Part shown: one piece after another, positions 4,597 to 4,864 of the stretch
How the letters are laid out: every line of letters starts with the position of its first letter
Position numbering within the stretch: the stretch's first letter is position 1
Source: Octopus sinensis
Taxonomy: Eukaryota
Assembly: GCF_006345805.1 (NCBI RefSeq)
Contig: NW_021825626.1
Coordinates: forward strand, 1-15,046
Reading direction: 5' to 3'
Length of the DNA: 15,046 nt
Position numbers and translations under genes: made by a program
Notes under the pieces: model-generated
What the model saw: the letters and a program-made list of their open reading frames with translations, nothing else
Told to the model about the DNA's origin: nothing
The model's database searches: none

Positions 4597-4606
<10 letters not shown>

Positions 4607-4864
4607 TATTTGAGACAAAACCACTATTTTGCAAAACAAACAAGGAAAGACTTAATCAATACATAAAATTTAATAAATAGTCAAAAAAACCGCCACTTCA
4701 TAATTTGTAACTGAATTATTGAAGTCCACCTGAAGATTGTCGATCAAGACAAGAAACGATTGTAGTGGCGGTTTTTTTGACTATTTATTAAATTTTATGT
4801 ATTGATTAAGTCTTTCCTTGTTTGTTTTGCAAAATAGTGGTTTTGTCTCAAATAATATTTTATA
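4597..4864. repeat. Perfect 101-bp inverted repeat with a 66-bp spacer
   Basis: 4597-4697 is the exact reverse complement of 4764-4864, checked base by base (101/101). Spacer is 4698-4763. Confidence 0.97.
4726..4768 (+). ncRNA. Minimal type I hammerhead ribozyme motif (Penelope-like-element type)
   Basis: Stem I is CCAC(4726-29)/GTGG(4765-68). The core is CTGAAGA (4730-36). Stem II is TTGTC/GACAA with loop GATCAA. GAAA lies at 4753-56. Stem III is AC/GT with loop GATT. The cleavage triplet is GTA (4762-64). Pair 10.1-11.1 is U-A rather than the usual G-C, and activity is untested. Confidence 0.8.

What the first reader, a model, noticed from the sequence alone, without database searches (positions are those of the whole stretch)
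4597..4864. Perfect 101-bp inverted duplication whose breakpoint coincides with the predicted cleavage site
Seen: the right arm starts at A4764, the H base of the GUA triplet, so the inverted arm reproduces almost exactly the predicted 3' cleavage product (from G4765). Established: Penelope-like elements often show inverted, truncated pLTR copies. Inference: reverse transcription ran to the 5' end of a self-cleaved RNA and then switched template, which would be a genomic record of in vivo ribozyme activity. The 101/101 identity implies a recent event, gene conversion, or an assembly artefact.
Basis: partly seen in the sequence, partly recalled or inferred. Interest (0 to 1): 0.85.

Follow-up and report, generated by a model that had tools for sequence, protein, structure and literature searches.

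The report
Penelope-like retroelement insertion with inverted partial copy
The perfect 101-bp inverted repeat is real, but it is the usual head-to-head "inverted truncated copy" that Penelope-like retrotransposons leave when they insert, and its breakpoint at the predicted ribozyme cut site is better explained by a 3-base overlap than by ribozyme cleavage.

Summary
Observation confirmed. Arms 4597-4697 and 4764-4864 are 101/101 complementary (104 bp with one mismatch). The right arm starts at A4764, the H17 base of a hammerhead-like motif.

It is not a one-off. The 2.72-Gb host genome (probably an octopus) holds about 1,000 arm copies. All copies examined have one architecture: (TA)n, an inverted 5'-truncated copy ending at an inner site (U170), a direct copy running about 80 nt further (a "tail"), then (TA)n. 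This matches the published Penelope-like element (PLE) insertion pattern. Long relatives carry RT and GIY-YIG-like ORFs. The 250-nt unit in the window is a retrocopy of the spliced 5' leader of that element, with a 1.3-kb GT-AG intron removed.

Breakpoints vary widely. The main hot spot is 7-8 nt downstream, at the end of a U7 run. There is no sharp peak at GTA|GTGG. The window junction has a 3-nt ACT microhomology and recurs at 5 loci, but comparable AC(T) joins occur at other arm positions (4, 3, 1 and 1 loci). A weaker signal remains: ends are about 3-10 times rarer across the ribozyme than just 3' of the cut site.

The 101/101 identity reflects youth, because both arms equal the family consensus.

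The parts
4573..4596 (.). (TA)n microsatellite: left half of the insertion target
   Evidence: nearly every copy of the family is flanked by (TA)n on both sides. The boundary is ambiguous by up to 4 nt because the arm starts with TATA.
4597..4697 (-). Inverted, 5'-truncated partial copy of the element. It is antisense on the + strand and covers template positions U170 down to U72.
   Evidence: Its outer end is the same in all copies (TATAAAATATT next to (TA)n). Its inner end varies between copies.
4695..4697 (+). ACT microhomology at the junction between the inverted copy and the direct copy
   Evidence: Read from the sequence. The inverted copy would continue CCGCC-ACT-ACAATCG. The direct copy starts ACT-TCATAATTTG. 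The same junction occurs at 5 loci.
4695..4947 (+). Direct copy of the 250-nt unit (U1 to about U253). It is a retrocopy of the spliced 5' leader of the PLE transcript.
   Evidence: 98.5% identical to the family unit; the unit equals the long element minus a roughly 1.3-kb GT-AG intron.
4695..4717 (+). Exon 1 of the leader (U1-U23). The splice junction is 4717|4718.
   Evidence: in long copies this sequence is followed by GTAAGT, and ATTGGAAGTCC is preceded by TTTTTTAG.
4726..4768 (+). Type I hammerhead-like motif: helix I CCAC/GUGG, core CUGAAGA, helix II 5 bp, GAAA, helix III 2 bp plus tetraloop GAUU, H17 = A4764. Predicted cut 4764|4765.
   Evidence: descriptor hit; 0 hits in 3000 simulated windows. 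No Rfam hit. Not recovered by minimum-free-energy folding. Activity untested.
4764..4864 (+). Right arm of the inverted repeat: the part of the direct copy that is duplicated in inverted form
4772..4778 (+). T7 (U7) run. Its 5' edge (U79-80) is the main family-wide hot spot for truncation and junction points.
4858..4868 (+). Inner TATA-rich site (U170) where every inverted copy ends. Inferred inner start site of reverse transcription.
   Evidence: Compare the two internal RT start sites of a PLE shown in vitro (PMC11167929).
4865..4947 (+). 'Tail': roughly 83-nt extension present on one side only, ending ...CCCTAATATTTATTATT
   Evidence: present once per copy, always on the direct copy. PLE tails are described in PMC8557442 and PMC11167929. 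In L037 and L029 the tail runs on into the ORF start.
4948..4968 (.). (TA)n microsatellite: right half of the insertion target

Best explanation
The 268-bp palindrome is part of one young insertion unit of a Penelope-like retrotransposon (PLE) that landed in a (TA)n microsatellite. The direct copy (4695-4947) is a cDNA of the spliced 5' leader of the element's RNA. It runs from the 5' end (U1) to the outer start site of reverse transcription (about U250). The left arm is a second cDNA of the same RNA species, primed on the other DNA strand at an inner TATA-rich site (U170), and it is therefore inverted. That second cDNA stopped about 100 nt in, at U70-72. It was joined to the end of the full-length cDNA through the 3-nt overlap ACT. 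Shown here: the family-wide architecture, the variable junctions, the microhomology, the spliced origin and the youth of this copy. Inferred from published in-vitro work on another PLE: priming on both strands and two internal start sites. The position of the stop next to the hammerhead cut site is best explained by which microhomology sites were available, within a zone 3' of the ribozyme where such stops are common. Ribozyme cleavage is not needed.
For: (1) Family. More than 20 full-length matches to the 268-bp unit, plus many 2x170-nt head-to-head palindromes. The arm 34-mer occurs 484 + 476 times, against 0 in the control. (2) One architecture in all copies examined: (TA)n, inverted copy x..U170, direct copy y..U250, (TA)n, with the tail on one side only. 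(3) The same architecture at kilobase scale in long copies; L038 is an 8.5-kb palindrome. These long copies carry RT motifs and a GIY-YIG-like ORF, with RT-named homologues. (4) Literature. PLE insertions often have an adjacent inverted 5'-truncated copy, a tail at one end and (TA)n targets (PMC8557442). A purified PLE protein cleaves and extends both DNA strands and starts reverse transcription at two internal sites that bracket the tail, and hammerhead mutants do not change insertion (PMC11167929). (5) Junctions vary. (6) Joins onto U1 use AC(T) overlaps at several arm positions: U72 x5, U117 x4, U153 x3, U144 x1. (7) The window arms equal the family consensus, and arms of older copies diverge independently. 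(8) The short unit is the long element minus a GT-AG intron.
Against: The RT and endonuclease identity of the long copies rests on motifs read by eye and on unnamed or weakly named homologues. Pfam gave no hit. The endonuclease piece found no homologue. Two-strand priming has been shown only for a lizard PLE in vitro, not for this family. The model does not by itself explain two things: junction points are about 3-10 times rarer across U13-U69 than from U70 onwards, and the window-type junction is the commonest of the AC(T) joins (5 loci in 3 subfamilies). Raw reads for this 15-kb unplaced contig could not be checked.
Confidence: 0.6

Rival explanations
1. The RNA copied into the inverted arm had been self-cleaved by the hammerhead. 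Reverse transcription ran off its 5'-OH end at G72 (G4765), and the cDNA was then joined to the other copy. The junction would be a fossil of in-vivo ribozyme activity.
For: The breakpoint lies within 0-3 nt of the predicted cut. The same junction occurs at 5 loci in 3 subfamilies, so it probably formed more than once. One symmetric palindrome has both copies ending at the cut, CCGCCAC-T-GTGGCGG (L102). Arrays re-start repeatedly after ...CCGCCAC (L109; C9575). Two copies skip the ribozyme core precisely (C13:20994981; C8:33394868). End density is about 0.3-1 per site at U13-U69 against about 3 per site from U70 on.
Against: There is no peak at U72. Counts are U70 x4, U71 x3, U72 x4, U73 x3, U76 x5, U77 x4. 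There were none at U71-73 in the unbiased sample. The dominant hot spot is U79-80. Equivalent microhomology joins occur at U117, U153 and U144. Symmetric palindromes also occur at U76/77, U78 and U79/80. Most cDNAs read through the ribozyme to U1, so at most a few percent of templates could have been cleaved. [quoted passage not shown] Self-cleavage of this motif is untested, and Rfam models do not recognise it.
Confidence: 0.2
2. Deletion after insertion. The copy was inserted as a full 2x170-nt palindrome like L021. It later lost one ribozyme-bearing half-centre by replication slippage between the two ACT triplets, because long perfect palindromes are unstable.
For: Full palindromes are the commonest class. 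The missing segment is flanked by the direct repeat ACT in the full form (...CCGCC-ACT-ACAATCG...GAAGTG-ACT-TCATAA...). Many copies show small centre variations.
Against: The same deletion would have to recur in 3 subfamilies. The asymmetric copies nearly always keep the direct copy full-length and truncate the inverted one, which a symmetric hairpin-driven deletion does not predict. Some junctions carry filler bases, typical of template switching or end joining. The window copy has otherwise accumulated no substitutions.
Confidence: 0.13
3. Assembly artefact: a fold-back chimera or mis-joined reads on a short unplaced contig.
For: The window is the whole of a 15-kb unplaced contig rich in microsatellites. 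PLE tandem and inverted structures are known to trouble assemblies (PMC8557442).
Against: The identical junction and architecture are present on chromosome-scale contigs C2, C16 and C18 and on another unplaced contig, C3278, each with its own unique flanks. Hundreds of other copies have the same layout.
Confidence: 0.03
4. A MITE or foldback DNA transposon with 100-170-bp terminal inverted repeats and TA target duplication.
For: Long inverted arms flanked by TA-rich sequence. Some copies are near-perfect palindromes.
Against: The unit is asymmetric, with a tail on one side only. The centre, not the ends, varies. The unit is derived from a spliced transcript of an RT-bearing element. Kilobase-scale head-to-head versions exist with variable 5' truncation.
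Confidence: 0.02

Closest known systems
Canonical EN+ Penelope-like element insertions (Penelope/Poseidon, Neptune and related clades) as described by Craig et al. 2021 (PMC8557442)
   Same: An inverted 5'-truncated copy lies directly upstream of the direct copy. A tail is present at one end only. Insertion is into (TA)n or AT-rich DNA. A hammerhead motif lies in the pLTR close to the ORF start. An intron lies in the leader, and both spliced and unspliced copies are inserted. Partial tandems continue into the ORF (L037, L029).
   Different: The tail here is about 83 nt rather than 30-40 bp. Most copies are 250-nt retrocopies of the spliced leader alone. The RT and GIY-YIG domains could not be confirmed with Pfam.
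In-vitro mechanism of the green-anole PLE (Frangieh et al. 2024, PMC11167929)
   Same: Both DNA strands are cleaved and extended. Reverse transcription starts at two internal sites that bracket the tail. Uncleaved RNA is the main template. All three match the layout seen here: the inverted copy starts at the inner site, the direct copy at the outer site, and most cDNAs read through the ribozyme.
   Different: Nothing was tested biochemically for this family. The start sites here are TA-rich and resemble the (TA)n target, whereas the anole element starts at an AC-rich stem-loop not homologous to the target.
Animal non-LTR retrozymes (Cervera and de la Pena 2020, PMC7229834; Li et al. 2026, bioRxiv 10.64898/2026.07.22.740005)
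   Same: A short (170-400 nt) AT-rich non-coding unit with a type I hammerhead that has a 2-bp helix III plus tetraloop, derived from the pLTR region of a PLE.
   Different: Retrozymes are head-to-tail tandem arrays expressed as circular RNAs. These copies are dispersed and head-to-head, and each is bounded by the transcript 5' end and the RT start site, not by two ribozyme cuts.
L1 twin priming (from my own knowledge: Ostertag and Kazazian 2001)
   Same: A second priming event on the other target strand produces an inverted segment, joined to the first cDNA through microhomology.
   Different: Twin priming gives an inversion without duplication. Here the same template region is present in both orientations.
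R2 and other non-LTR elements whose 5' end is set by an HDV-like self-cleaving ribozyme (from my own knowledge: Eickbush and Eickbush 2010)
   Different: In R2 nearly all full-length 5' junctions map to the cut. Here at most a few percent of ends lie at the hammerhead cut, and there is no peak.

Membership tests
Penelope-like elements (PLE) | Single ORF with a PLE-type reverse transcriptase followed by a GIY-YIG endonuclease | tested here: inconclusive
   Long relatives (L037, L039, L038) carry FIQIDIDNYYSSI, DIPMGAP.SAQ and YRDD. Downstream they carry a Cys-rich linker, VVYKC...VYIGSTS...CCYLCSNE. The RT piece has 105 homologues, one named 'reverse transcriptase domain-containing' and one from Octopus vulgaris. 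Pfam gave no RVT or GIY-YIG hit. The endonuclease piece found no homologue.
Penelope-like elements (PLE) | Insertion units with an adjacent inverted 5'-truncated copy and/or partial tandems (pLTR) | tested here: met
   Continuation of the tail into the ORF start in L029 and L037.
Penelope-like elements (PLE) | [quoted passage not shown] | tested here: met
   positions U171 to about U250 occur once per unit, always on the direct copy. The length is about 83 nt, against the published 30-40 bp.
Penelope-like elements (PLE) | Insertion bias for AT-rich DNA or microsatellites | tested here: met
   (TA)n on both sides in nearly all copies.
Penelope-like elements (PLE) | Intron in the leader, with intron-containing copies retained in the genome | tested here: met
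   a 1.3-kb GT-AG intron is present in long copies and exactly absent from the short family.
Hammerhead ribozyme, type I | Conserved core CUGANGA ... GAAA ... UH with helices I, II and III in type I topology | tested here: met
   one descriptor hit in the window (helices of 4, 5 and 2 bp). 0 hits in 3000 simulated windows.
Hammerhead ribozyme, type I | Recognition by the curated covariance models (Rfam hammerhead families) | tested here: not met
   No hammerhead hit at E <= 10, even on the 74-nt motif alone. Minimum-free-energy folding does not give the three-way junction. Minimal PLE hammerheads are known to be atypical (PMC7229834).
Hammerhead ribozyme, type I | Self-cleavage 3' of H17 | not testable with these tools
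   Needs in-vitro transcription or 5'-OH end mapping.
Animal non-LTR retrozymes | Head-to-tail tandem repeats, each with a hammerhead, so that unit-length RNAs are released by two cuts | tested here: not met
   Copies are dispersed and head-to-head. Only occasional local tandems were seen (L002, L040, L025/26).
MITE / foldback DNA transposon | Symmetric terminal inverted repeats with fixed ends and no RNA-derived features | tested here: not met
   The tail is asymmetric. The centre is variable. The unit derives from a spliced transcript.

The most novel reading that the evidence does not exclude
A small minority of insertion events in this PLE family (at most about 2-3% of cDNA ends) used hammerhead-cleaved RNA as template. 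Their footprints would be the ends at U70-72 (including the window copy), the symmetric (72,72) palindrome L102, the arrays that restart after ...CCGCCAC, the copies that skip the ribozyme core exactly, and the 3-10-fold drop in end density across the ribozyme. That would be the first genomic evidence that a PLE hammerhead cleaves in vivo, and it would put an upper limit on how often.
Probability: 0.22. Interest if true: 0.65.

Novelty: new member of a known kind. Interest (0 to 1): 0.3.

Why it matters
The function of the hammerhead in Penelope-like elements is an open question. Published work found that ribozyme-dead mutants insert normally in vitro and that no RNA-seq reads end at the cut site (PMC11167929). 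A clear pile-up of genomic junctions at the cut would have been the first in-vivo evidence of cleavage. This family does not show that. Most cDNAs read straight through the ribozyme, which agrees with uncleaved RNA being the main template. The family is still a useful natural data set of about 1,000 young copies with both cDNA ends preserved. It documents the two-start-site, two-strand insertion pattern. It also shows that the bulk of copies are dead-on-arrival retrocopies of the spliced 5' leader.

Tried and rejected
1. Rfam scans of the whole window, of 4560-4900 and of 4712-4785 gave no hammerhead hit. The many 'miRNA' hits are microsatellite or hairpin artefacts, including hits produced by the palindrome itself.
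2. RNA folding of the motif did not give a hammerhead fold (z = 0.57).
3. Pfam scans of the ORF pieces and of homologues, PDB sequence searches and a homologue search with the endonuclease piece were all uninformative.
4. My first reading suggested a peak of 10-11 ends at U71/72. Re-scoring by longest prefix spread these over U70, U71 and U72 at 3-4 each, level with U73-U77, so I withdrew the 'peak'.
5. I considered the recurrence of the window junction in three subfamilies as evidence for a hard template end at U72. One search showed similar recurrent joins at other AC(T) sites.
6. A search for copies whose sense strand stops at A71, which would indicate use of the 5' cleavage fragment, gave only 2-3.
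7. Gene conversion between arms is rejected, because arm-to-arm differences in older copies are about the sum of each arm's differences from consensus.
Those loci are known only from the 23-34-nt strings printed by the pattern searches.

Full report
THE OBSERVATION

The inverted repeat is real. Arms 4597-4697 and 4764-4864 are 101/101 complementary. With one mismatch (T4698/T4763) the repeat extends to 104 bp, and the spacer is 66 nt.

A hammerhead descriptor of my own finds exactly one motif in the window and none in 3000 simulated windows. The descriptor requires CUGANGA, helix II, GAAA, a short helix III, UH and a helix I of at least 4 bp.
- Helix I: CCAC 4726-4729 with GUGG 4765-4768.
- Core: CUGAAGA 4730-4736.
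- Helix II: 5 bp.
- Helix III: 2 bp plus tetraloop.
- H17 = A4764, so the predicted cut is 4764|4765.

Rfam's hammerhead models do not recognise the motif at any threshold tried. Minimum-free-energy folding does not recover it. Type I hammerheads with a 2-bp helix III and a tetraloop are described for invertebrate repeats (PMC7229834). Catalysis is untested.

IT IS A REPEAT FAMILY, NOT A SINGLE EVENT

The window is the whole of contig C2097 in a 2.72-Gb eukaryotic assembly. A protein from Octopus vulgaris is 85% identical to part of the element's RT, so the host is probably an octopus.

The 268-bp unit has more than 20 full-length matches at 83-97% identity. There are also many 2x170-nt head-to-head palindromes. 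A 34-mer from the arm occurs 484 + 476 times, against 0 for the control.

I number the unit U1 = A4695 (ACTTCATAATTTG...). The cut is then U71|U72, the T7 run is U79-85, the outer end of the arm is U170 and the 3' end is about U250.

All copies examined have the same layout:
- (TA)n
- an inverted copy from a variable point x to U170
- a direct copy from a variable point y to about U250
- (TA)n

The stretch U171-250 is thus present on one side only.

WHAT THE FAMILY IS

Pairs of arms 1-8 kb apart are the same head-to-head structure built from a longer element. L038 is an 8.5-kb palindrome.

The long copies carry RT motifs: FIQIDIDNYYSSI, DIPMGAP.SAQ and YRDD. Downstream they carry a Cys-rich linker and a GIY-YIG-like ORF, VVYKC...VYIGSTS...CCYLCSNE. 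A read-through of the RT pieces finds 105 homologues, one of them named 'reverse transcriptase domain-containing'. Pfam confirms none of this, and the endonuclease piece has no detectable homologue. The protein evidence is therefore at the level of motifs.

The layout matches the published description of Penelope-like elements (PMC8557442):
- an adjacent inverted 5'-truncated copy
- a tail at one end
- (TA)n targets
- a hammerhead in the pLTR

It also matches in-vitro work on a lizard PLE (PMC11167929). There, both DNA strands are cleaved and extended, reverse transcription starts at two internal sites that bracket the tail, and ribozyme mutants do not affect insertion.

THE SHORT UNIT IS A RETROCOPY OF THE SPLICED LEADER

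In long copies U1-U23 is followed by GTAAGT. About 1.3 kb further on, TTTTTTAG precedes ATTGGAAGTCC. Joining the two exons gives exactly the short unit.

In L037 and L029 the tail runs on into an ORF start, ATGGATTTTACAGG. The 250-nt unit is therefore the 5' leader of the element's spliced transcript, copied from the RT start sites back to the RNA 5' end. This explains why U1 behaves as a hard end and why full palindromes (1,1) are the commonest class.

(a) Unbiased sample. I took the first 100 arm hits on contigs C1-C3, about 75 copies.
- Ends cluster at U1-12 and U79-90.
- Only about six ends lie between U13 and U71.
- None lie at U71-73.

(b) Genome-wide pattern scans with negative filters.
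- Ends at the A-run (U79) are the main hot spot: 12 in half the genome, against 0-4 for each of U72-U78.
- U111-120 holds about 23 events in a third of the genome.
- A scan for U61-71 found only about two true ends in U61-70.

(c) One scan with the same filter for every end between U63 and U77, re-scored.

| Position | U63 | U66 | U68 | U69 | U70 | U71 | U72 | U73 | U74 | U75 | U76 | U77 |
|---|---|---|---|---|---|---|---|---|---|---|---|---|
| Ends | 2 | 3 | 2 | 1 | 4 | 3 | 4 | 3 | 1 | 2 | 5 | 4 |

There is no peak at GTA|GTGG. Instead there is a plateau of about 3 per site from U70 onwards. In the same units there is about 1 per site just upstream, about 0.3 per site further into the ribozyme, and about 20 at U79.

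(d) The window junction is CCGCC-ACT-TCATAA, a 3-nt overlap. It occurs at 5 loci in three subfamilies. Analogous joins onto U1 occur at other AC(T) sites in the arm:

| Site in arm | Sequence context | Loci |
|---|---|---|
| U72 (window type) | CCGCC-ACT | 5 |
| U117 | GACTT, 4-nt overlap | 4 |
| U153 | AGAGAC | 3 |
| U144 | CCACT | 1 |
| not assigned | AAAC | 1 |

Five against a mean of about 2 is not significant.

(e) Only 2-3 copies have a sense strand that stops at A71.

WHAT REMAINS IN FAVOUR OF CLEAVAGE

- End density drops about 3-10-fold across the ribozyme.
- One palindrome has both copies ending at the cut (L102: CCGCCAC-T-GTGGCGG).
- Two arrays restart repeatedly after ...CCGCCAC (L109, C9575).
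- Two copies skip the ribozyme core exactly (C13:20994981, C8:33394868).

These features fit a few cleaved templates. They fit equally well a reverse transcriptase that pauses at the U7 run and at helix I. That pause would let the trailing enzyme on the same RNA, or a template switch, end the second cDNA there. The upper limit is low in any case. If every end at U70-72 were due to cleavage, that would be about 2-3% of cDNA ends, while most cDNAs read through to U1. This agrees with uncleaved RNA being the main template (PMC11167929).

THE PERFECT IDENTITY

Both window arms are identical to the family consensus. In older copies, arm-to-arm differences are about the sum of each arm's differences from the consensus. 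The copy is therefore young, and gene conversion is not needed. An assembly artefact is unlikely, because the same junction and layout occur on chromosome-scale contigs with different flanks. Reads for this contig could not be checked.

VERDICT

This is an ordinary and well-preserved PLE insertion unit: a new family of a known kind. The coincidence with the cut site is within a 3-nt microhomology and is not backed by a family-wide peak. The cleavage reading is not excluded; I give it about 0.2.

LIMITS OF THIS ANALYSIS

- Counts from the pattern scans are small.
- They depend on filters whose pass rates (0.25-0.46) I estimated from base composition.
- Partner sequences are not random.
- The U72-class loci found late could not be fetched.

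Noticed in passing
L036-L039 (e.g. L038 7405-8729); window 4717|4718: The short 250-nt family is the long element minus a roughly 1.3-kb GT-AG intron (donor AATT|GTAAGT, acceptor TTTTTTAG|ATTGG). Most copies in the genome are therefore retrocopies of the spliced 5' leader only, from the RNA 5' end to the internal RT start sites.
   Followed up: yes
family position U79-80 (window 4772-4773 and mirror 4688-4689): The strongest truncation and junction hot spot of the family is the 5' edge of the U7 run, 7-8 nt 3' of the predicted ribozyme cut. A possible cause is a weak rU:dA hybrid or pausing before helix I. Many symmetric palindromes are centred there (AAAAAAATTTTTTT, e.g. L084).
   Followed up: partly
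L031 1466-1527 (G000 C2:186232207-186232268): A long inverted copy ends in about ten units of (CCCTAA)n, which is (TTAGGG)n on the sense strand, at the junction with its partner. This is telomere-type repeat inside a head-to-head PLE unit.
   Followed up: no
L109 (G000 C26:20885177-20885260) and G000 C9575:8541-8608: Short tandem arrays of a 34-38-nt piece of the arm (U72-U105, antisense). Each unit ends ...CCGCCAC, as if synthesis restarted repeatedly after reaching the cut-site position.
   Followed up: partly
G000 C13:20994981 and C8:33394868 (strings only): These copies join CCGCCACT or CCGCCACTAC directly to (GGAC)TTCCAATA. The ribozyme core and helices II and III are thus skipped precisely across the base of helix I.
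   Followed up: no
L021 centre (G000 C9142:34991-34992): Some full palindromes have one extra G/C at the centre (...ATGAAGT-G-ACTTCAT...). This could be the extra base copied from an mRNA cap, and would fit U1 being a capped transcript start.
   Followed up: no
L038 (G000 C1:180926402-180935625): An 8.5-kb head-to-head palindrome made of two 5'-truncated copies of the coding element, with several arm segments 100% identical.
   Followed up: partly
window 1-15046: The whole contig is packed with (TA)n, (TG)n, (GA)n and mixed microsatellites. All 128 sub-threshold Rfam hits (mir-3149, mir-297, mir-466 and others) fall on these and are composition artefacts. Around the palindrome, MIR8562 and MIR169_2 'hits' are produced by the long hairpin itself.
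   Followed up: yes
G000 C12:20450424 and C19:32885564 (strings only): Two copies whose sense strand reads ...GAAACGATTGTA and then TG/TA-type sequence. These are possible 3' ends at A71, the other side of the predicted cut.
   Followed up: no
window 4720-4722: The window copy has lost one G of the GG at U27-28 (TTATTGAAGTCC against consensus TTATTGGAAGTCC). This is its only difference from the family consensus in the hairpin region.
   Followed up: yes
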